From Zootoca vivipara (lineage: Eukaryota): DNA of 64,000 bases. The translations under genes were made by a program, and so were the position numbers. This document shows positions 21,966 to 31,824 of this stretch, piece after piece. The notes under the pieces are model-generated. The model had not been told where the DNA came from. It saw only the letters and a list, made by a program, of their open reading frames with translations, and searched no databases. The stretch's first letter is position 1, and every line of letters starts with the position of its first letter. The stretch is taken from assembly GCF_963506605.1 (NCBI RefSeq), contig NC_083283.1:22940001-23004000 (forward strand). Direction: 5' to 3'.

Positions 21966-23263
21966 TTCTATAGGATGCCTTAACTTGAAAAGTATACCCA
22001 CTTGTTTCAAACTGATCAGCATCTCATTGCAACATAAATATAGTACCTTATCTGCTTCTACTTTGGGTTAATTATATGAGTTGTTAAGAGTGCTGCAAGC
22101 CTCTTCAAAGCTTAGCATCTGTTACAAAATTCCATTGCTGAGGTGGTAAAGTGGTGTTCAGGCATCTAAATCAAAACTTGTATTCATTTTGTCTCTGGTC
22201 TGGTCAGGCAATGCATTTATTTGTGTGTATACAAGGTGTCATATGATGAGTGTTGGAATTTCTTGGTTGACCCATAAGCTTTGTTTTGAAATTTAATGGA
22301 ATAACAACATACTCAGTGTTCTTGCGACACTAGGCCAAGCCATGGAGCCATGGCTTAATTCTGGGTGGTAGAACAGCAGCAGAGAAGAGTGAAGTGGCTG
22401 TGATTTTTTTTTAAAAAAAAACTGGGAGTACCTGTACATTGACACATTCACCCACGGTTTGGGTTAACATTGTGTGTAAACTGAGCTGCTATGTAGATTC
22501 TGGTTTCCCCTTTGCTTATGAATCTTACTGAGTCTTGCGTTAGATATTCAGAATTCCTTTAAGCTTTTAATGCTTCAACGGCAGCCTATGGTTTCTCATT
22601 GGGGATTAGCAAATAAAGAAGATAATCAATAAAAGTAATTTAGTGTACGAAGTAATATGTTGATTTTCTTTCCCTTTGAATTTTAGCCAGAGATGGTTTA
22701 GATTATGACACCCAGTGCTTTGCCTTACGGCTGCGATTCTATAACTTTTTTCAGATGCATCAACTATGCACTGCCTAATTTGTTATGAAAGTGAAAGAAA
22801 AGTTGTTCAATAATTCTAGCTAAATTGTGCTGCTAACATATGCTTCTGATGAAATTTTGGTAATATGATAAGAATTTGAAAGAACTGTGTGATTGCTTAG
22901 GTTTAAATAACCATTTCAATGACAGTCAACTAAAGATGTATTTTCCTTCCTTTTTTGAGGATCATTTATGAGATGTTATTAAGTCCAAATGGCAGAGATC
23001 TGCCAGTAAGACATACTGAAATATAACCAGCAGAATTGTAAAATGAGTGCTCCTTGAATTTAGCATTAAGGTTAAATATAATTTTATTCAATTTATAATT
23101 TAATGCAACTTTGCTGAGGTAGTTCAGTTAAACGCATTTTGAAATCTTATTTCCATGATACAGATTTGTATTTAAACACATTTTTAATAACTGCATATGA
23201 TGGGTGCCTCTAGATTTATAATTCTTTGCTATACTGCAAATATTGTTTGATAGTGAAAGTCTG

Positions 23264-23691
23264 TGTGAGGGACAGGGGATATCGCGAAGTCCCTCCCCTC
23301 CTGAGTTCAAGCCCGTCCCCGAGCAAAGGGGAAAGCAGGGAGAGTTCCGATTCCAGTGGGGAAGCAGGAAGTCGTGTCCGAGGCTCAGGCAAGGTAGAGG
23401 AGCCAGGGTCCCAGGTGGGACAGGAAGGGGCAAGTAAGGGGGGAAGACCCATCCCCCCAACTCCAGAATTACGCAGGAAGAGGAGGGGCAAGAGGATGGG
23501 TCTGCCAAAGCTTTTGTGTTGGAGAAAGACGCGCCAAAAGCCATTAGGAGGTTCTGAAACCGACTGACAACATCGCTCCGTGTAAATAGCAATGACTTGA
23601 GCACTGTAAATACGCAGCACCAATAAAAGAATAAAATGCAGAGCTGCGTAGCGTCGTTACTCTGAAGTAGTCCACTCCGGCCACTGTGACA
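23264..23691 (+). repeat. 5' LTR
   Basis: TGTGAGG...GTGACA; no differences from 28647-29074 by visual comparison; two AATAAA signals near 23622-23635. Confidence 0.97.
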
Positions 23692-23693
23692 GC

Positions 23694-23704
23694 AACCTCC
23701 TAAT
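23694..23704 (+). promoter_or_regulatory. Self-priming primer-binding site
   Basis: AACCTCCTAAT is the exact reverse complement of LTR 23543-23553 ATTAGGAGGTT; no TGG-type tRNA PBS present. Confidence 0.8.
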
Positions 23705-23733
23705 CATTTTTGGGCTACTTTGGAGTTGCCGGG

Positions 23734-24968
23734 ATGAGCGTGTCAGAGGCGGAGAAGTGGCGGCAGATCGCTGAGCAAGCCCAGCTAGAACTGCAACAGC
23801 TGTCGCTGCAGGCGCAGGGAGAATTGAAGGCAGCTAAAGAGGAGACTAAGAAGGTCCAGGACGACCGGCTACAACTTGCGGAACAGGTGAGAGAGCTCCA
23901 GGAAAAAGAGCAGCATTTAAGGGCGGTGGCGGTAGACCTCCAAAACAAGCTGGATGCAGAGAAAAACAAGGCGGGAGGGGCACCCCAAGTCCAAGTGCTG
24001 CCAGGAAGGAGAGCCGGGACCCTAGTAAGCAAGTTCAATGGAGACCCGAAGGAGTTTCAGGGCTTTGAGACTGAGATTGTGTATGCTCTTGAGCTGCACC
24101 ACGATGAGTTCCCTGATGATGAGCACAGAGTAGCGTTTATTGTGGAGCACCTTACAGGGGCGGCCAGGGAGTGGCTAAGACCGTTAATTGCAACAAGGAA
24201 TCCTTGCATGAAGAATGTCAAACTATTTCTAGAAGGTTTGAAAACGATGTATTCGTCCGATAGTCATATGGACCAGACTAAGGAGGAACTTCATAATTTA
24301 CGCCAAGGAAATATGACAGTTCGCGCGTATTGGGCGAAATTCACCATGCTGGTGCACAGATTGGGGTGGGATCTGGAGTCTGCCCCAATGCAAGCGGCGT
24401 TTTACTTGGGGTTGCATGAGGAGGTGAAGGATGAGCTCTCGAGAGGTCCAAAGCCCAGTAATATGGATCAACTGAGCAAAGCGGCTCTGGCGGTGGGGGT
24501 GAGGCAGGAATCCAGATGGAGCGACAAGCAAGCAACGCGCGCAAAGCGGGCTTGGTTCCCACGGTCGCAGGAGAAGCCACTCCCTCAACAACCCTTTCAA
24601 GCCACGCCTGGGGCCAGTCAGGACCAGGAACCCATGCAGATTGATAGCGCGCGCGCGCGCGGGCTTTTCAAACCCCAGCGGCGCCAAGACGCAAGGAGGG
24701 AAGGGGTGGGAATTGCTTTCTCTGCAACTCCCCCCAGCATCTCGTCAGAGACTGCCCACATCGCAGGGAGTGGCAAGGAAAGGCGGGAACGGTTGTGCCC
24801 TCCCCCACTGACGCAGCACCACAGCAGGGAAACGGGAAAGCCTGGCTGCAGGAGACAAGGGGCGGCAGCCAGGCACAGTCAGCAGACAACAGCCCCAGCC
24901 CACCCACCCGCACAGAGAGGAGCAGAGCCAGCCCACCCCTCCCAGAGCAGGAGTGGTTCTCGAAGTGA
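23734..24968 (+). CDS. gag: Gag (coiled coil, capsid, CCHC knuckle), with a +2 frameshift in (GC)7 at 24647-24660 as assembled
   Basis: ATG 23734; KFNGDP...VAFIVEHLTGAAREW, LRQG..VRAY...F, EPMQID; knuckle CFLCNSPQHLVRDC lies in another frame and is restored by removing 2 bp; stop TGA 24966-24968. Confidence 0.85.
24827..24896 (+). promoter_or_regulatory. -1 programmed ribosomal frameshift signal (G GGA AAC plus pseudoknot)
   Basis: Slippery heptamer 24827-24833, 6-nt spacer, 10-bp stem 24840-24849/24865-24874, loop GGGGC 24859-24863 can pair with GCCCC 24892-24896; the -1 frame is the protease frame. Confidence 0.85.
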
Positions 24969-27900
24969 CGCTCACGCTCCCAAATGGCTATCCATTGACG
25001 GTCCTCGCCCTAATTGACAGTGGTGCCTCAGCCAACTTCTTCTCGAGAAACTTTGCAGAAGAGCACCAGATCCAGCTTCTGCAGCTGGATTTTCCTCTGC
25101 ACGTGGCAACCATTGACGGCAGAGAGCTGCTGGGAGGGGCCATCACTCATCAACCCCCCCCATGAGAATGACGGTTGGAAGGCACTCAGAGACACTGGCA
25201 TTCAACGTCACCACCATCTCAGACCCCCCAATCGTTTTGGGCATGAGCTGGCTGGCGCGCCACGACCCCTCCATAAGTTGGCATCAGAGATGCATCACTT
25301 TTGGATCGGACTTTTGCCTGGAACATTGCATGCAGCACCAACCAGGGGAGGGGCCTCCGATAGCCACGGTGGCCACCATGCACGTCAAAGGGGGTGAGGC
25401 GATACCCAAACCATACTGGGACCTGCAGGAGGTCTTCAGTGAAGCGGAGTCCGACCACCTGCCCCCACACAGGCCTTTTGACTGCCAGATCAACCTGGTG
25501 CCTGGGGCAACTATACCCCCAGCCAAGCTGTACGCCATGTCAGACCAGGAACTGGAGGATCTGCGCGCTTTTATCGACAAGAACCTCAAGCGGGGGTTCA
25601 TCAGAGAAAGCAAGGCAGCAGGGGGCAGCCCGGTCTTCTGGGTGGACAAGAAAGACACGCAACAGCGCCGTCTTGTGGTGGATTTTAGACGGCTGAATTC
25701 GGTGACAGAGCCAGTGGCTTTCCCCATGCCCAGAGTGGATGATCTCCTGACAGCGGCACGCAGAGGCAAGATTTTCACCAAGCTAGACCTGAGGGGGGCG
25801 TACAACTTGATCAGGATCCGGGAAGGCGATGAGTGGAAAACCACGATGTTCACGCCTCTGGGCTCTTTTGAATATCTGGTGATGCCCTTCGGGTTGCAAG
25901 GGGGCTCAGCATGCTTCCAGGCCTTCATGCACCACGTCCTGGGGTCCCTACTCTTCAGGAAATGCTTGGTCTTTCTGGATGACATCCTTATTTACTCCAA
26001 CGACCCAGTGCAGCACGTGAAGGACGTCAGGGAGGTGTTACAGCGCCTGAAGGAGAACCACCTGTATGTGAAGCTGGAGAAGTGCAAGTTTCACACCAAG
26101 GAGGTGGACTTCCTGGGCTACAAGCTGTCAGACAAGGGGCTGGCAATGGACAAGGACAAGGTGCAGACCATCCTGGACTGGCACAGCCCCAGGACGCGCA
26201 AAGATGCCCAACGCCTACTAGGCTTTGCCAACTTCTACAGGAAGTTCATCAAGAACTTCTCTCGAGTTACGGCTCCCATCACTGACTGCCTGAGAGGCAA
26301 GCAGAAGTTCAGGTGGACACCAGAGGCGCAAGCAGCGTTCGAAAGCCTCAAGAGGGTGTTCGCCTCAGACCAGAACCTGTTCCACGTGGTTCAGGACGCG
26401 CCCCTACGCATTGAAACAGATGCTTCTGATAAGGCTGTGGGCGCCATTTTGTTGCAACTGGACGCCAACAGAGAGTGGAGACCCTGTGCCTTCTTCTCCA
26501 GGAAGTTGACCCAGCCCGAGCGAAACTACACAGTTTTTGATCGGGAACTTCTTGCGATCCACGCGGCGTTCCAGCACTGGAGACACTTCCTGGTGGGCGC
26601 CAAGCACCCCATCCAGGTGTGCACAGACCACAAGAACCTGGAGTTCTGGAGAACTGCCAGGGTGCTCAACCAGCGGCAGATACGGTGGGCGGAGTTCTTC
26701 TCGAACTTCAACTTCTCCATACACTACATCCCAGGAGAGCAGAATGTCAGGGCGGATGCCCTCTCCCGCAAGCCAGAGTACATGGAGGAGGAGGCGCCAC
26801 CAGCCCCAAGGCACATTTTCCCCCCGTCGGCATGGTCCTGCGGAGCAGCAGTGGTGAGCGAGGCAGAACTCACAGCACTGACGGCAGCGGATGAATTTGC
26901 CAACCGCATCTTCAGAGAACTGAGAGGGGGGAGGGAGCAGGCAAAAGACTTTGCAGAACGCAGAGGGCTGCTTTTCTACAAGGGTGCGCTGTACCTACCC
27001 ACCACCCAGCTTCGACGTACGGTCCTCAAGCAGATGCACGACAACCCTACAGCGGGGCATTTTGGAAGGGACAAGACCACTCACCTAGTCATGAGACACT
27101 TCTGGTGGCCAGGGGTGAGGGAAGATGTTCGAGACTATGTAAGGGGCTGTACCACCTGCCAGCGGGCGAAGGTGGTCAGAGCAGCGCCACCAGGGTTGCT
27201 GGAGCCCTTAGCCACACCACACAGGCCGTGGGAAGTGGTGTCCATGGACTTCATCACAGATCTGCCTTCGTCCAGGGGTAAGACTGCAGTGTTGGTGGTG
27301 GTGGACCTCATGTCCAAAATGTGTCACTTTATACCGTGTGCCAGGGCAGTCTCGGCAGAAGAGACAGCCAAACTGTTTGTTGATCACATTTTCAGACTGC
27401 ATGGATTACCTTTAAGGGTTATTTCGGATCGTGGCCGCCAATTTGTTTCCAGGTTCTGGCGGCGGCTCATGAACCTCCTGCAGGTGGAGGTCAGCTTGTC
27501 GACGGCTAGACACCCGCAGACCAACGGACAAGCGGAGAGGGTCAACGCCATTCTGCAGCAGTACCTGAGATGCTACGTCAGCCAGCGGCAAACGGACTGG
27601 GTGGATCGCTTGCCACTAGCAGAATTTGCCTACAACAATGCAGTGCACGTCTCCACAGGGGTGTCGCCCTTTAAGGCCAATTACGGGCGCGACCTCAGAT
27701 CTTTCCCAGAGAGGGAGAGGGAGGAGGAGGAGGAGGGCCCACAGGCTGAGGATTGGGCAGAGGAACTGGAGACGGTGCACCAGCAGCTCAGAGAACACTT
27801 GGAGAGGGCCAAGGAAGCGTACAAAAAGGGGGCAGATCGCCACAGGCGACAAGGGGAGGTCATCAGGGTGGGGGACAAGGTGTGGTTGTCCTCGGAGGGC

Positions 27901-28950
27901 CTTCCCACCAGAGGGAGGTGCAAAAAGCTGGCACCCAAATGGCTGGGCCCCTTCACGGTCACGCAACAGGTCAACCCGGTGGCATACAGGCTGGCACTGC
28001 CAGAGGACATGAGGGTGCATCCAGTGTTTCATAGATCGCTGCTGTCGCCGTACAGGGAAAGCAGCAGGCTCAGAGACAGCGAACAAACCCCCGAGGGAGG
28101 GGGGGAGAGGGAAAGCAGGGAGCAACTCAATGAGGCCACGGCCATCCTGGATTCAAGGTGGGGGGTGGGGGGCCTGGAGTACCTCATGGCATGGGAGGAT
28201 GCTCCACCGTCCCAGAATGAATGGGTTCCCGCCACTCAGATACAGGAGGAATTCTTGGTGGAAGAATTTCACGCCCTCTTTCCCCACAGACCCAAGCCCT
28301 GGCACATGGAAAGGGAGGGGGAGGAGGAGGAGGCACGGGAGAACAGCTCACCATGGCGCTGGGAAGCGGAGTTTGAGGAACCAGAGGATGAGGTATGGGT
28401 GTCGCCAAGATCCACCCAGTCAGAGGAAGGAGCAGATTGGCAAAACATTTTTACCCCCACCAGCTCTGACGCCACGGACTTTTTGGGATTCCCGTCCTCC
28501 CAGGCGGAAGGGGGGGGCTCGCAGGACTGGGGGGAGGTGTTCACACCAACGGGCTCGGAGAGCACCGAGTTTTTAGGCTTCCAGTCGTCACCGACACATG
28601 GGGGGGGCCTGGGGAGGGGTGAAGGAGAGCTTGGGAGGGGGGTGGATGTGAGGGACAGGGGATATCGCGAAGTCCCTCCCCTCCTGAGTTCAAGCCCGTC
28701 CCCGAGCAAAGGGGAAAGCAGGGAGAGTTCCGATTCCAGTGGGGAAGCAGGAAGTCGTGTCCGAGGCTCAGGCAAGGTAGAGGAGCCAGGGTCCCAGGTG
28801 GGACAGGAAGGGGCAAGTAAGGGGGGAAGACCCATCCCCCCAACTCCAGAATTACGCAGGAAGAGGAGGGGCAAGAGGATGGGTCTGCCAAAGCTTTTGT
28901 GTTGGAGAAAGACGCGCCAAAAGCCATTAGGAGGTTCTGAAACCGACTGA
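24833..28950 (+). CDS. pol: Pol: protease, RT, RNase H, integrase, chromodomain and C-terminal tail; one base missing near the C8 run at 25154-25161 as assembled
   Basis: ALIDSGA protease; LDLRGAY...MPFGL...FLDD RT; TDAS/ELLAI/TDH/DALSR RNase H; HHCC, SMDF/SDRG/QAER integrase; GPF module; chromodomain 28126-28272. Confidence 0.95.
28619..28646 (+). other. Polypurine tract
   Basis: Purine-rich GAAGGAGAGCTTGGGAGGGGGGTGGA immediately before TGT of the 3' LTR. Confidence 0.8.
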
Positions 28951-29074
28951 CAACATCGCTCCGTGTAAATAGCAATGACTTGAGCACTGTAAATACGCAG
29001 CACCAATAAAAGAATAAAATGCAGAGCTGCGTAGCGTCGTTACTCTGAAGTAGTCCACTCCGGCCACTGTGACA
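28647..29074 (+). repeat. 3' LTR
   Basis: Direct repeat of 23264-23691, followed by TSD GTCTG. Confidence 0.97.
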
Positions 29075-31824
29075 GTCTGTTATTTCTGAACTTGGATGGC
29101 TTAAACCTTATTCAGAAGCTGGCACAAGATTTGCAGGATGCAGAAACAGTTGTTCTTAAGAAATTGGTGTTTATATAAAACACACTCTTTCCTATTGTGT
29201 TTGATTATAAAGATAAGAGTGGTTTTCCTAACTTCTTTCCCCCAGAATGGAAGAGACTTTTTACTGGTTGAAGGTATATTTGGAAAGTAATGGAAACTGG
29301 ATGATTTTTGCTAAACTTGTTTAGAGTAGATAGCTCTTTACCTGGATCTTAAGTTGGTATGTAAAGGTGTTGGTCAGCAGGAAGCTTCTTGGTCAAAGAA
29401 CATGCTTCTTAATTGTTTCCAAATTGTTGCTCTCTGTGTTGATGTTTTCCTGCAAGATTATATATGTAATTGTAGCACAACCTGAAAGTTGATTTGTGTA
29501 TTCGTTAAGTGTAAAAATACGCTGTGACTGTCTTCCTTCACAGATGACCAATTTTTATTTGAATGACCAAGAGTTATTTCAGATTATATGTAAAATTATG
29601 ATTACTGCTGCTGCCCCAAGATGCCTTACTTTACAATCTCATTGTTTTTGCTTTCTGTTCAAGGCTTCCCTTAGGTAAAGTGAGGCAGCTGCCTCAGACA
29701 GCAGACGTGGGAAGAATGGCAGCAGACAGAACTGTGTGTACCACCTAACCTTCTCTGTGCCTCCTCCTCCTAAGCTAGCGTGCTGTCCTTTGCTAGCATT
29801 ATTTCAAGTTTCAACTTCCAGGCTACTTACATCATTTCATTCAAAGCTTATAAGCATAAATATCACCCTCCCACGTTGATAGCCCTTGATGTCCGTAAAA
29901 CTGACTAGATTCCTAATTATTTAATACAGTCGTTTAGGTTGACTTAAAAGTACAAATGTTATTGGGAAAGCAGGGCGCAAGCTTTAGACTATTGTTGTTC
30001 TTAATGGTCACTGAATCTGCACTCTACGGCCCCCTTAAGAGTAGCTTCACATCAACAGGCTTGAAAATTAGGTAGTCACCTGACATTTAAACAGAAGTGC
30101 AAATTACATTATTCGTGTCCTAGAGGTACCAGCAATCCATGTTTAAGCCAAGATATATAACAGAAAATGTTGTATAAAGCTACTGTTTTTGCCTGTCAAG
30201 CAATTAAGCAATTTCAGTTTAAATGTCAGTTTGAAGATGAGAAACAGGAAAACAATGTAGAAATATTAGTTGCTCTTAATTCTTCTGTTTTGGTGTTATC
30301 CAAGGCAATAGTGTTCTGTAGCCACTGTATGACCTACCCAAAGGCAATTGCAATCCTTACTTTTTCAAAGCTAATTGTTCCATGTTTAGTTTACTAAATG
30401 TCATCTGGACTCAGTAAAAAGCAAATGACCTGCATTGAATTAGTATAATTGTAACAAAAACAAAATATCACATAGTTTGGGTCTCATACAGGAAAGGAGA
30501 AAGTTGGAAAAAATTCCCTGTTTGATAAATAAAATCTGAGATATGAAACAGGTTTTACCTGTTTTGGACTCTTTAAAATATTAAATTTTTACTTTTTATT
30601 CTTTACTATTCGAAAATAACATTTCCTCCCTCAAACTTATTTGACTGTCTCACATCAGTATAAGGTTATTTTAGTGATATATTTCTCTTTTTGCCAATTT
30701 AATCCTTTTTAAAATTCCCATGTAAGGCCCCACCATGACCTGGACTTGTAGGTTAGAGAGTGGCAAACACCTGCAAGAGGGGTCTGTTACGTATGCAAGA
30801 GGCTCAGTCCTAAGCAGTGCCCCCCTAGGAGCGATAGGCAGGTGATCAAGGAATGGTCAGTTTGAGAGATAAATTAAACCAGAGCCACATGAATACTGTA
30901 GGTAGTTTTAAGAAGACTAGTACAAATACAAGTGGCATATTTTATCATCATGTACAGTTTATATTGACTTTGCCAGAAGAAGGTAGGGGCAGAAGAGAGA
31001 GAGAAACAGTGTCTTTTTCTGGCTTTTTGGTTCTGTAGTTCTGGTTATATGAAGTCTCACCAGTCACTGGTGCAGGGAATCTCTGCAGAGATCCAGAACA
31101 GAATGTTGTAATTCTGTAATTATTTGAAACCTACTAATAGCAATTGTACAATCCACAGAAAGTTAAGTACACTGATCCCTACGGAGATCAGTGAGATTTC
31201 ATATGTTCTTTTGTCTGTTGTAGCCAACATGTGGCAGGCTTGTTTAGGTGTTATTAAAGATCACATGGGGAAATATTTCACACAGGTGCTTAGATTTCTA
31301 TTTGCAGTTATTATGGAAACTAGATCATTCAGTTAAGAATAAAAGAGAGAGAGAAGAAAACTGTTGTTCTTGATATGCAAGAAATAATGTAGAAACTGTG
31401 GGCCAGACAATGTGTGATTGTAACAGACCCCACACACTGTTCTTCCCCATAGCACTTCCTTTATTGCAGACTCATTTCTGGTATTGGAGTCTAGTTGCAG
31501 AATAGATGTCCCAGGGGTTGGGCAGGTGAGTGAGCCAGGTAAGAAAAAGTGGCAAATATTCAACAACCTCAACCTGTGGGCCCTTTCTGCACTCTTACCC
31601 TCTGCTTTACATATGATCAGGGCAAATCCATTTTCAAAGAATGGTTCTTTTGCCTTCACATAGAGTTTGATTCAAACCCATCTCTAGACAGCTTCCTTAG
31701 TGTAAACTTTAAAAAAGCCTTTCTGACTCACACCAGAGGCCCATCTAGTCCAGCACCCTGTTCTCATAGTGGCCAACCAGGTATCTATATGTAATATGTA
31801 CCTGAGTGTACACGCTTCCCACCT

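What the first reader, a model, noticed from the sequence alone, without database searches (positions are those of the whole stretch)
28435..28581. Retrotransposon integrase tail carries two tandem FLGF motifs mimicking the LEDGF-IBD/TND-interacting motif: candidate new integration-tethering system
Seen: after the chromodomain, Pol has two acidic Ser/Thr-rich repeats 30 aa apart, DWQNIFTPTSSDATDFLGF (28435-28491) and DWGEVFTPTGSESTEFLGF (28525-28581). Twelve of 19 residues are identical, yet 9 of those 12 codons differ synonymously, so this is an old duplication maintained at the protein level. Established: host partners of the LEDGF/p75 integrase-binding domain and related TFIIS N-terminal domains (JPO2/CDCA7L, POGZ, IWS1, MLL1, DBF4, MED1) use a short helix ending in (I/L)F, an acidic phospho-regulated linker and FxGF. 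Recalled examples, to be verified: JPO2 IFNAPSDDEEFVGF, IWS1 IFGESGDEEEEEFTGF, MLL1 EDEQFLGF. Short C-terminal integrase motifs target Ty5 (Sir4) and MLV (BET proteins), while HIV-1 binds LEDGF through its folded catalytic core instead. Inference: this chromovirus may use short-linear-motif mimicry to tether to LEDGF/HRP2 or another TND elongation factor and integrate into transcribed gene bodies, consistent with (not proven by) its position in an STK3 intron. I know of no description of this in a Ty3/Gypsy integrase but could not search.
Basis: partly seen in the sequence, partly recalled or inferred. Interest (0 to 1): 0.92.

Follow-up and report, generated by a model that had tools for sequence, protein, structure and literature searches.

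The report
Lizard retrotransposon integrase carries LEDGF-binding-like motifs
A young lizard Ty3/Gypsy retrotransposon, like its relatives in wall lizards and anoles, carries in its disordered integrase tail conserved copies of the short motif that host proteins use to dock onto the chromatin readers LEDGF/HRP2, so it may steer its insertions into transcribed genes; binding has not been tested.

Summary
Two 19-residue units lie at 28435-28491 and 28525-28581. They share 12 of 19 residues, 9 of them through different codons (pS 0.89, pN 0.23).

The units sit in a predicted disordered tail after the chromodomain of a Ty3/Gypsy Pol. The element spans 23264-29074, has identical 428-bp LTRs and a 5-bp target duplication, and lies in sense orientation in an intron of an STK3/MST-like kinase gene.

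Each unit reads W-x-x-[IV]-F, a 9-residue acidic Ser/Thr linker, then FLGF. This fits the published LEDGF/HRP2 IBD-binding (TND-interacting) motif and resembles the validated DPF3a peptide.

The main new result is conservation. The same bipartite motif, with an 8-9-residue linker in all 20 strict units, occurs in diverged Gypsy lineages of Podarcis muralis, in unnamed assemblies and in Anolis carolinensis, while the surrounding tail is barely alignable. Motif-less chromoviruses keep the HP1-type aromatic cage. Motif bearers have lost cage residues, or the whole chromodomain.

I found no paper describing this. Binding and insertion bias remain untested, and no TND sequence was available for complex prediction.

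First readers flagged the same family on at least seven other pieces of this genome.

Verdict: a well-supported candidate for a new variant of tethered integration.

The parts
23259..23263 (+). Target-site duplication GTCTG, 5' side
   Evidence: The same 5 bases flank both LTRs.
23264..23691 (+). 5' LTR, 428 bp, TG...CA
   Evidence: 100% identical to 28647-29074.
23734..25017 (+). gag
   Evidence: Pfam Retrotrans_gag, Ty3_capsid and DUF4939; first Met at 23734.
25016..25161 (+). Protease N-terminal half with catalytic DSG, in a different frame from the rest of Pol; this copy's frame is interrupted near 25150-25160
   Evidence: Three-frame translation.
25162..28950 (+). Pol ORF (protease C-terminal part, RT, RNase H, integrase, SH3, chromodomain, tail); its last 304 nt lie in the 3' LTR
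28135..28272 (+). Chromodomain with an incomplete aromatic cage (N-W-A where HP1 has Y24-W45-Y48)
   Evidence: Pfam Chromo 27.3 bits against a cutoff of 25.1; alignment to Drosophila HP1 1KNA; AF2 pLDDT 92-95.
28354..28404 (+). Probable relic third unit (WRWEAEF-acidic linker-VWVS) without FxGF
   Evidence: Resembles the second unit of P0122 (RWEAVF...FRGF), by eye; coordinates. This is an inference.
28435..28491 (+). TIM/IBM-like unit 1: DWQNIF-TPTSSDATD-FLGF
28525..28581 (+). TIM/IBM-like unit 2: DWGEVF-TPTGSESTE-FLGF
28599..28646 (+). Purine-rich tract abutting the 3' LTR; probable polypurine tract, lying inside the Pol ORF
   Evidence: Sequence; its function is inferred from its position.
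28647..29074 (+). 3' LTR
   Evidence: AATAAA at 29005 and 29013; RNA molecule ends pile up at 29022.
28852..28923 (+). LTR-encoded basic C-terminal patch (RRKRRGKR...LLCWRK), conserved in related families; nuclear-localisation-signal-like
29075..29079 (+). Target-site duplication GTCTG, 3' side

Best explanation
The two units are short linear motifs in the disordered C-terminal tail of the integrase. They imitate the host's TND-interacting / IBD-binding motif: a hydrophobic W-x-x-[IV]-F anchor, an 8-9-residue acidic and phosphorylatable Ser/Thr linker, and FxGF. The most likely reading is that they dock the integrase, and with it the pre-integration complex, onto the TFIIS-N-terminal-type domain (IBD) of the H3K36me2/3 readers LEDGF/PSIP1 or HRP2/HDGFL2. 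That would bias insertion towards the bodies of transcribed genes. Two units could raise avidity or engage LEDGF, for which the review reports dimerization. Phosphorylation of the linker (one minimal CK2-type site per unit, plus a conserved TP) could tune affinity. Shown here: the motif, its protein-level conservation, its constant spacing, its location in a predicted disordered region, and its co-occurrence with a reduced chromodomain. Inferred: the partner, the role of phosphorylation and the effect on integration.
For: 1) Match to the published definition. TIMs have an anchoring short helix with F/V/L/I, an 8-16-residue linker rich in D/E/G/S/T that is phosphorylated by CK2, and an optional FxGF. 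All known LEDGF/HRP2 partners have the FxGF and need it (review PMC9987994). The consensus is (S/E)xFxGF. The validated DPF3a peptide LFGSTSESDTSTFHGFDEDD binds the HRP2 IBD, loses binding with F325A or F328A, and binds better when Ser at -2 is phosphorylated (PMC7337902). JIL-1 DFxGFDE binds the LEDGF domain of Drosophila JASPer, so the interaction is old in animals. The window units read [IV]F + 9 residues (7 of 9 are D/E/S/T, none basic) + T-[DE]-FLGF. Podarcis relatives read LF-TPTLSAST-FQGF-DSDEE. 2) Conservation. The window sits in a 100%-supported clade of 10 integrases in which every member has the motif, at only 58-64% integrase identity. Further fragments carry one or two units. Both units align position for position between the window and P0122/P0275, so the two-unit layout predates these families. 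All 20 strict units have a linker of 8 or 9 residues. 3) A second lineage in Anolis carolinensis (P0106, P0109: DIFA[EA]PSDE[DE]SFEGF) carries the motif and has no chromodomain. The tree needs at least 2 changes of state. 4) Selection acts on the protein: pS 0.89 against pN 0.23 between the units. 5) AF2 folds the chromodomain confidently and leaves the tail at pLDDT 40-55, with a 3-residue helix on QNI of unit 1 and no packing onto the chromodomain. 6) 44 of 46 motif-less chromoviruses keep [YFW]-W-[YF]; motif bearers do not. 7) From established knowledge, integrase C-terminal tails are where Ty5 (Sir4), MLV (BET) and chromoviruses carry their targeting determinants.
Against: The primary IBM papers are not held, so the comparison rests on one review, one validated peptide and one fly motif. 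Short motifs are degenerate, and profile or sequence searches of the PDB with the units did not retrieve IBD-ligand chains. In the window the -2 position is Thr rather than the published Ser/Glu, and the linker is less acidic than in the relatives. The 8-9-residue linker is at the short end of the stated 8-16 range. Most units also fit an LC3-interacting W-x-x-[VI] core. Loss of the first and third cage residues also defines plant group II chromodomains, which as I recall still localise to heterochromatin, so the chromodomain may still work. One intronic copy and RNA reads with many different LTR flanks are not a controlled test of targeting.
Confidence: 0.55

Rival explanations
1. The units are a conserved short linear motif for a different host partner, not a TND. 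Candidates are Atg8/LC3-family proteins through the acidic W-x-x-[VI] core, an appendage-type or nuclear-transport factor that reads aromatic-acidic peptides, or a kinase or phosphatase docking site.
For: Most units contain W-x-x-[VIM] after acidic residues, which fits the LIR core as I recall it. The FTPT element is conserved in the window and in Podarcis group A, and no TIM description mentions it. Nothing here identifies the partner directly.
Against: An LIR does not explain the invariant FxGF at a fixed 8-9-residue distance. Podarcis group A (DDWLFTPT) and Anolis (RDIFAEPS) do not fit W-x-x-[LIV] yet keep [LI]F + linker + FxGF. According to the review, the bipartite geometry with two aromatic anchors and an acidic linker is what the two pockets and the basic patch of a TND read.
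Confidence: 0.25
2. The motif acts within the element. It could contact its own integrase, chromodomain or Gag to regulate multimerisation, processing or particle assembly, or act as an autoinhibitory pseudo-ligand.
For: It co-varies with changes in the neighbouring chromodomain. Two tandem copies could bridge integrase subunits.
Against: AF2 with a family alignment shows no confident packing of the units on the chromodomain; the tail stays at pLDDT 40-55. The Anolis lineage keeps the motif without any chromodomain. The motif matches a known host ligand class closely.
Confidence: 0.12
3. There is no function. The resemblance is a chance feature of an acidic, low-complexity tail that was duplicated and inherited.
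For: A single FxGF arises in 2.7% of shuffled tails. Whole-unit identity across families (0.35-0.36) is only moderately above other tail segments (0.24-0.32).
Against: The anchor residues and the spacing are retained across lineages whose integrases are only 46-64% identical, while 45 neighbouring tail residues are unalignable. Synonymous sites are saturated but replacement change is low. The full bipartite pattern occurs in 0.03% of shuffles. No such acidic-linker pattern appears in the roughly 100 motif-less relatives scanned.
Confidence: 0.06

Closest known systems
Cellular TND-interacting motifs / IBD-binding motifs (JPO2/CDCA7L, IWS1, KMT2A, POGZ, ASK, MED1, DPF3a; fly JIL-1)
   Same: Bipartite pattern of a hydrophobic anchor ending in [ILV]F, an acidic Ser/Thr linker and FxGF. 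It lies in a disordered region, often in more than one copy per protein, and acidic residues follow FxGF in the relatives.
   Different: It is carried by a retrotransposon integrase rather than a transcription regulator. The window has Thr at -2 and a conserved W four residues before the anchor F. Binding is untested.
HIV-1 and other lentiviral integrases binding the LEDGF/p75 IBD
   Same: The proposed partner and the proposed outcome are the same: tethering to an H3K36me reader and integration into transcribed gene bodies.
   Different: From established knowledge, lentiviral integrase uses the folded catalytic-core dimer interface. Here the contact would be a linear motif imitating the host's own ligands.
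MLV integrase C-terminal tail binding BET proteins, and the Ty5 integrase targeting domain binding Sir4
   Same: A short peptide at the integrase C-terminus recruits a chromatin protein. In Ty5 the contact is switched by phosphorylation (established knowledge).
   Different: The partner, the motif and the chromatin compartment differ.
Chromovirus chromodomain targeting (MAGGY, Tf1; group I and II chromodomains)
   Same: Same element class and same position at the integrase C-terminus. The window still has a folded chromodomain.
   Different: The cage is reduced to N-W-A, the group II pattern that the cited paper says was known only from plants. An extra motif-bearing tail of about 200 residues follows, whereas most relatives end within about 30 residues of the chromodomain.
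POGZ, a domesticated pogo transposase that binds the LEDGF/HRP2 IBD
   Same: A transposon-derived protein listed among IBD partners.
   Different: POGZ is a host gene derived from a DNA transposon, not an active retroelement. No link to integration targeting is known to me.

Membership tests
TND-interacting motif / IBD-binding motif (LEDGF/HRP2 class) | FxGF with two phenylalanines | tested here: met
   FLGF in both units. F-x-G-F is present in 20 units of 18 related proteins.
TND-interacting motif / IBD-binding motif (LEDGF/HRP2 class) | Ser or Glu at -2 from the first Phe: (S/E)xFxGF | tested here: inconclusive
   The window has Thr at -2 in both units, which is phosphorylatable but not the published residue. 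Relatives have S, E, D, T or G.
TND-interacting motif / IBD-binding motif (LEDGF/HRP2 class) | Flexible acidic or phosphorylatable linker of 8-16 residues | tested here: met
   The window linker has 9 residues, 7 of them D/E/S/T and none basic. All 20 strict units have 8-9 residues.
TND-interacting motif / IBD-binding motif (LEDGF/HRP2 class) | Upstream short helix presenting F/V/L/I to the first pocket | tested here: inconclusive
   W-x-x-[IV]-F is present. AF2 gives only a 3-residue helix on QNI at pLDDT about 50.
TND-interacting motif / IBD-binding motif (LEDGF/HRP2 class) | Lies in an intrinsically disordered region | tested here: met
   pLDDT is 40-55 beyond the chromodomain, against 92-95 for the chromodomain itself.
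TND-interacting motif / IBD-binding motif (LEDGF/HRP2 class) | Direct, Phe-dependent binding to a TND/IBD, enhanced by CK2 phosphorylation | not testable with these tools
   No TND sequence could be obtained from the session's sources. One minimal S/T-x-x-D/E site per unit was seen by eye.
Chromovirus (Ty3/Gypsy with an integrase chromodomain) | RT, RNase H, integrase and a C-terminal chromodomain between LTRs | tested here: met
   Pfam hits; LTRs and target-site duplication.
Chromovirus, group I chromodomain | Aromatic cage Y-W-Y | tested here: not met
   N-W-A when aligned to HP1 1KNA. Other clade members lack the third cage residue and mostly the first. By eye, Podarcis group A also lacks the W.
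Tethered integration through an integrase C-terminal peptide | Insertion-site bias that depends on the peptide and its partner | not tested

The most novel reading that the evidence does not exclude
A squamate Ty3/Gypsy lineage changed its way of choosing integration sites. It let the methyl-lysine cage of its chromodomain decay, or lost the chromodomain altogether as in Anolis. It acquired tandem mimics of the host's LEDGF/HRP2-binding motif, possibly more than once. If so, it arrived by linear-motif mimicry at the same H3K36me-reader tether that lentiviruses reach through a folded interface. This would be the first retrotransposon known to hijack the TND-TIM network of the transcription elongation machinery.
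Probability: 0.4. Interest if true: 0.9.

Novelty: new variant of a known kind. Interest (0 to 1): 0.78.

Why it matters
Where mobile elements insert decides how much harm they do and how they shape genomes. Only a handful of tethering mechanisms are known: Ty1, Ty3, Ty5, Tf1, MLV with BET, lentiviruses with LEDGF, and chromodomains. A vertebrate Gypsy family that imitates the host's own LEDGF/HRP2 ligands would add a new mechanism. It would show convergence with lentiviruses and extend the TND-TIM interaction network to genomic parasites. It would also give a natural experiment, because motif-bearing and motif-less sister families live side by side in the Podarcis muralis genome. The motif is short and portable, so it could also interest people who design targeted integration tools.

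Tried and rejected
- PDB sequence searches with the 80-residue tail segment and with a profile of the two units returned only chance hits: pepsins, an FN3 protein and RexA. Searches at this level cannot see short linear motifs.
- The ESM Atlas search on the 61-residue motif region gave no usable hit.
- The primary IBM/TIM papers (Tesina 2015, Sharma 2018, Cermakova 2021) are not held. A text search for the recalled JPO2, IWS1 and MLL1 strings found only the DPF3a paper. Those recalled sequences are therefore not used as evidence.
- Complex prediction was not run. It accepts only session sequences or Swiss-Prot references of bacteria, archaea and phages, and no TND/IBD sequence could be obtained that way.
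- A third protein search with the P0122 tail added only more Podarcis proteins.
- RNA reads are mostly 90-95% alike, so they come from other copies, and they lie on both strands. They show that the family is transcribed at a low level but say nothing firm about this copy or about targeting.
- I considered that the conservation is nucleic-acid level (polypurine tract or LTR). I rejected this because the units lie 66-212 nt upstream of the LTR and differ at synonymous sites.

Full report
**1. What is at the coordinates**

Translation of 28435-28581 gives DWQNIFTPTSSDATDFLGF, an 11-residue spacer, then DWGEVFTPTGSESTEFLGF. These are residues 1092-1110 and 1122-1140 of a 1262-codon ORF at 25162-28950.

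Pfam finds these domains in that ORF:
- RVT_1
- two RNase H models
- Integrase_H2C2
- rve
- SH3_Tf2-1
- a Chromo domain at residues 992-1037 (27.3 bits, cutoff 25.1)

Upstream lies a gag ORF with Retrotrans_gag and Ty3_capsid matches.

- 12 of 19 residues are identical.
- 9 of those 12 use different codons.
- Nucleotide identity is 36/57.

Nei-Gojobori counting gives pS 0.89 (saturated) against pN 0.23 for the 19 codons, and dN/dS of about 0.22 for the whole 30-codon repeat. The duplication is therefore old and is kept at the protein level.

**2. The element**

Two 428-bp LTRs (23264-23691 and 28647-29074, TG...CA) are 100% identical and are flanked by the same 5 bases, GTCTG. This is a very recent insertion.

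The Pol ORF continues 304 nt into the 3' LTR. The purine-rich tract that abuts the LTR lies inside the ORF, and the units lie 66-212 nt upstream of the LTR.

This copy is not fully open. The protease catalytic DSG (25016) is in a different frame from the rest of Pol, and the frame changes near 25150-25160. Reads from other copies show a length difference in that neighbourhood.

MST-type kinase exons lie on the + strand on both sides of the element, at about 8191 and 35969.

**3. How the units compare with the published motif**

The review of TFIIS N-terminal domains describes TIMs as follows (PMC9987994):
- a short anchoring helix with F/V/L/I
- an 8-16-residue linker rich in D/E/G/S/T that CK2 phosphorylates
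- an optional FxGF

The FxGF is present and essential in every known LEDGF or HRP2 partner. Several proteins carry two or three TIMs.

The HRP2-DPF3a paper adds three points (PMC7337902):
- The consensus is (S/E)xFxGF.
- The binding peptide is LFGSTSESDTSTFHGFDEDD.
- Binding is lost with F325A or F328A and gains from phosphoserine at -2.

The fly JIL-1 motif DFxGFDE binds the LEDGF domain of JASPer.

The window units have an [IV]F anchor with W four residues before it. They have a 9-residue linker with 7 D/E/S/T residues and no basic residue, then T-[DE]-F-L-G-F. The fit is good. There are two soft spots: Thr instead of Ser/Glu at -2, and a linker at the short end of the stated range.

**4. 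Conservation, the main new result**

A search with the tail found Podarcis muralis Gypsy polyproteins that carry ...DDWLF-TPTLSAST-FQGF-[SD]S[AD]EE directly after the chromodomain. A search with the integrase half and a full HMMER scan of 1.84 billion representatives added more:
- a second Podarcis group: RWR[GE][VM]F-[KE]TS[ED]D...S-FRGF
- unnamed fragments P0122 (FWEEQF-ATTDEEEED-FVGF and RWEAVF-ESTDDDSSS-FRGF) and P0125 (QWKTVF-ESDENEDTD-FLGF)
- Podarcis fragments P0123, P0127, P0274 and P0275
- decayed Zootoca vivipara copies with LSGF
- an Anolis carolinensis lineage: RDIF-A[EA]PSDE[DE]S-FEGF (P0106, P0109)

In all 20 strict units the distance between the anchor F and FxGF is 8 or 9 residues. 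In an alignment of tails, both units of the window line up with both units of P0122 and P0275, so the two-unit layout predates these families. By contrast, 45 residues between the chromodomain and unit 1 have no counterpart at all.

Whole-unit identity (0.35-0.36) is only moderately above the rest of the tail (0.24-0.32). What is kept are the anchors and the spacing.

**5. Phylogeny**

On a tree of the integrase region (49 rows, IQ-TREE quick search), the window lies in a clade of 10 with 100% support, and every member of that clade has the motif. Their integrase identities to the window are only 58-64%.

This clade sits inside a squamate clade of 17 rows (98% support), which also holds:
- P0014, with no motif
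- the Anolis P0017-19 family, with a variant DIVMPDEEE-NLGF
- Podarcis P0016, with a canonical chromodomain and no motif
- its sister, Anolis P0106/P0109, with the motif

At least two changes of state are needed. The tree cannot tell two gains from one gain with losses, and the Anolis branch is long, so its placement deserves caution.

In Anolis P0106/P0109 the chromodomain is missing altogether. The motif follows the string GDSVM, which by analogy with the window's GVDVR (the verified LTR start) is probably already LTR-encoded. This is an inference, because no DNA was available.

**6. The chromodomain**

Aligned to Drosophila HP1 (1KNA), the window has N at Y24, W at W45 and A at Y48.
- Of 46 motif-less chromoviruses in the sample, 44 keep [YFW]-W-[YF].
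- All motif bearers lack the third cage residue and most lack the first.
- Podarcis group A also replaces the W (by eye).

A caveat applies. Loss of the first and third residues defines group II chromodomains, which the cited paper says were so far seen only in plants (PMC3605345). As I recall, these still localise to heterochromatin. The domain may therefore still work. The co-variation is suggestive, but it rests on one or two evolutionary events.

**7. Structure**

AF2 with the family alignment folds the chromodomain at pLDDT 92-95 and leaves everything after it at 40-55. A three-residue helix falls on QNI of unit 1, and the tail makes no confident contact with the chromodomain. This fits a linear motif in a disordered tail and gives no support to an intramolecular role.

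**8. Chance**

In 200,000 shuffles of the tail:
- one FxGF appeared in 2.7%
- two appeared in 0.03%
- one full bipartite pattern appeared in 0.03%
- two full patterns never appeared

Among the 270 proteins then retrieved, the only other F-x(6-12)-FxGF matches are a folded RT segment (C-[LE]-F...F-[LV]-G-F) and an integrase-core segment (FFANNGRHPRTFPGF in two Podarcis proteins). Neither has an acidic linker.

**9. Reads and copies**

The element's words are held by runs of the window's species (organism A, several studies) and of a second species (organism B).

Raw RNA reads cover the element thinly and are mostly 90-95% alike, so they come from other copies. Many different flanks join the LTR start, and molecule ends pile up at 29022, just after AATAAA at 29005 and 29013. 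The family is therefore transcribed, but this is no test of targeting.

First readers flagged the same two-motif tail on at least seven other pieces of this genome. This shows a multi-copy family. It is not independent support for the interpretation.

**10. Literature**

Four searches combining LEDGF, FxGF, TIM or short linear motif with retrotransposon, Gypsy, chromovirus or integrase found no description of such a motif in a Ty3/Gypsy integrase. The library lacks most subscription journals, so this is absence within the held papers only.

**11. Reading**

- The best explanation is host-ligand mimicry that tethers the integrase to LEDGF/HRP2 (confidence 0.55).
- The main rival is another host partner (0.25). 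For example, an LC3-type reader fits W-x-x-[VI] in most units, but it fits neither group A nor Anolis and does not explain the FxGF at fixed spacing.
- An internal role in the element (0.12) and no function (0.06) are less likely.

**12. Verdict**

I class it as a new variant of a known kind (tethered integration through an integrase tail peptide) and rate it of high interest.

Noticed in passing
window 25016-25161: This copy's protease is split between two frames. The catalytic DSG at 25016 is in one frame and the rest of Pol, from 25162, is in another, with the change near 25150-25160. Reads of other copies show a one-letter length difference in that neighbourhood. Despite identical LTRs, this copy is probably not autonomous, unless the assembly is wrong there.
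   Followed up: partly
window 28647-28950, especially 28852-28923: The Pol ORF runs 304 nt into the 3' LTR. Its end (a basic cluster plus LLCW[RK]K and a Ser/Asp-rich terminus) is conserved in P0122, P0008, P0125 and, more loosely, Podarcis group A. Part of U3 therefore appears to be protein-coding under constraint; it may be a nuclear localisation signal.
   Followed up: partly
window 28354-28404: A probable decayed third unit (WRWEAEF, an acidic linker, then VWVS in place of FxGF). It lies inside a 42-residue insertion that relatives lack.
   Followed up: partly
window 29005-29022 (and the equivalent place in the 5' LTR): Two AATAAA signals are followed by a pile-up of RNA molecule ends at 29022 in both raw RNA runs. 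This is a likely polyadenylation site, and so the R/U5 border, of the family.
   Followed up: partly
window about 2521, 7099, 8191, 35969, 39308, 58987 (+ strand): Exons of an STK3/STK4 (MST)-type kinase lie at these places. The retrotransposon sits in sense orientation in the roughly 27-kb intron between the exons at about 8191 and 35969.
   Followed up: partly
P0106 and P0109 (Anolis carolinensis), last ~110 residues: This Gypsy lineage has no chromodomain at all. Its TIM-like motif follows the string GDSVM, which probably marks the LTR start, so the motif may be LTR-encoded there. P0018 and P0019 carry a variant with NLGF at a similar place.
   Followed up: partly
runs X11-X13 (organism B): A second species holds 52-60% of the element's 31-letter words. 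The family is therefore shared, nearly identical, between two species. This could be recent common ancestry or transfer; I did not look into it.
   Followed up: no
window 23534-23726: Another first-reader note (s1-850153) proposes a tRNA-independent self-priming structure at the U5-leader of this element. I did not examine it.
   Followed up: no
   Followed up: no
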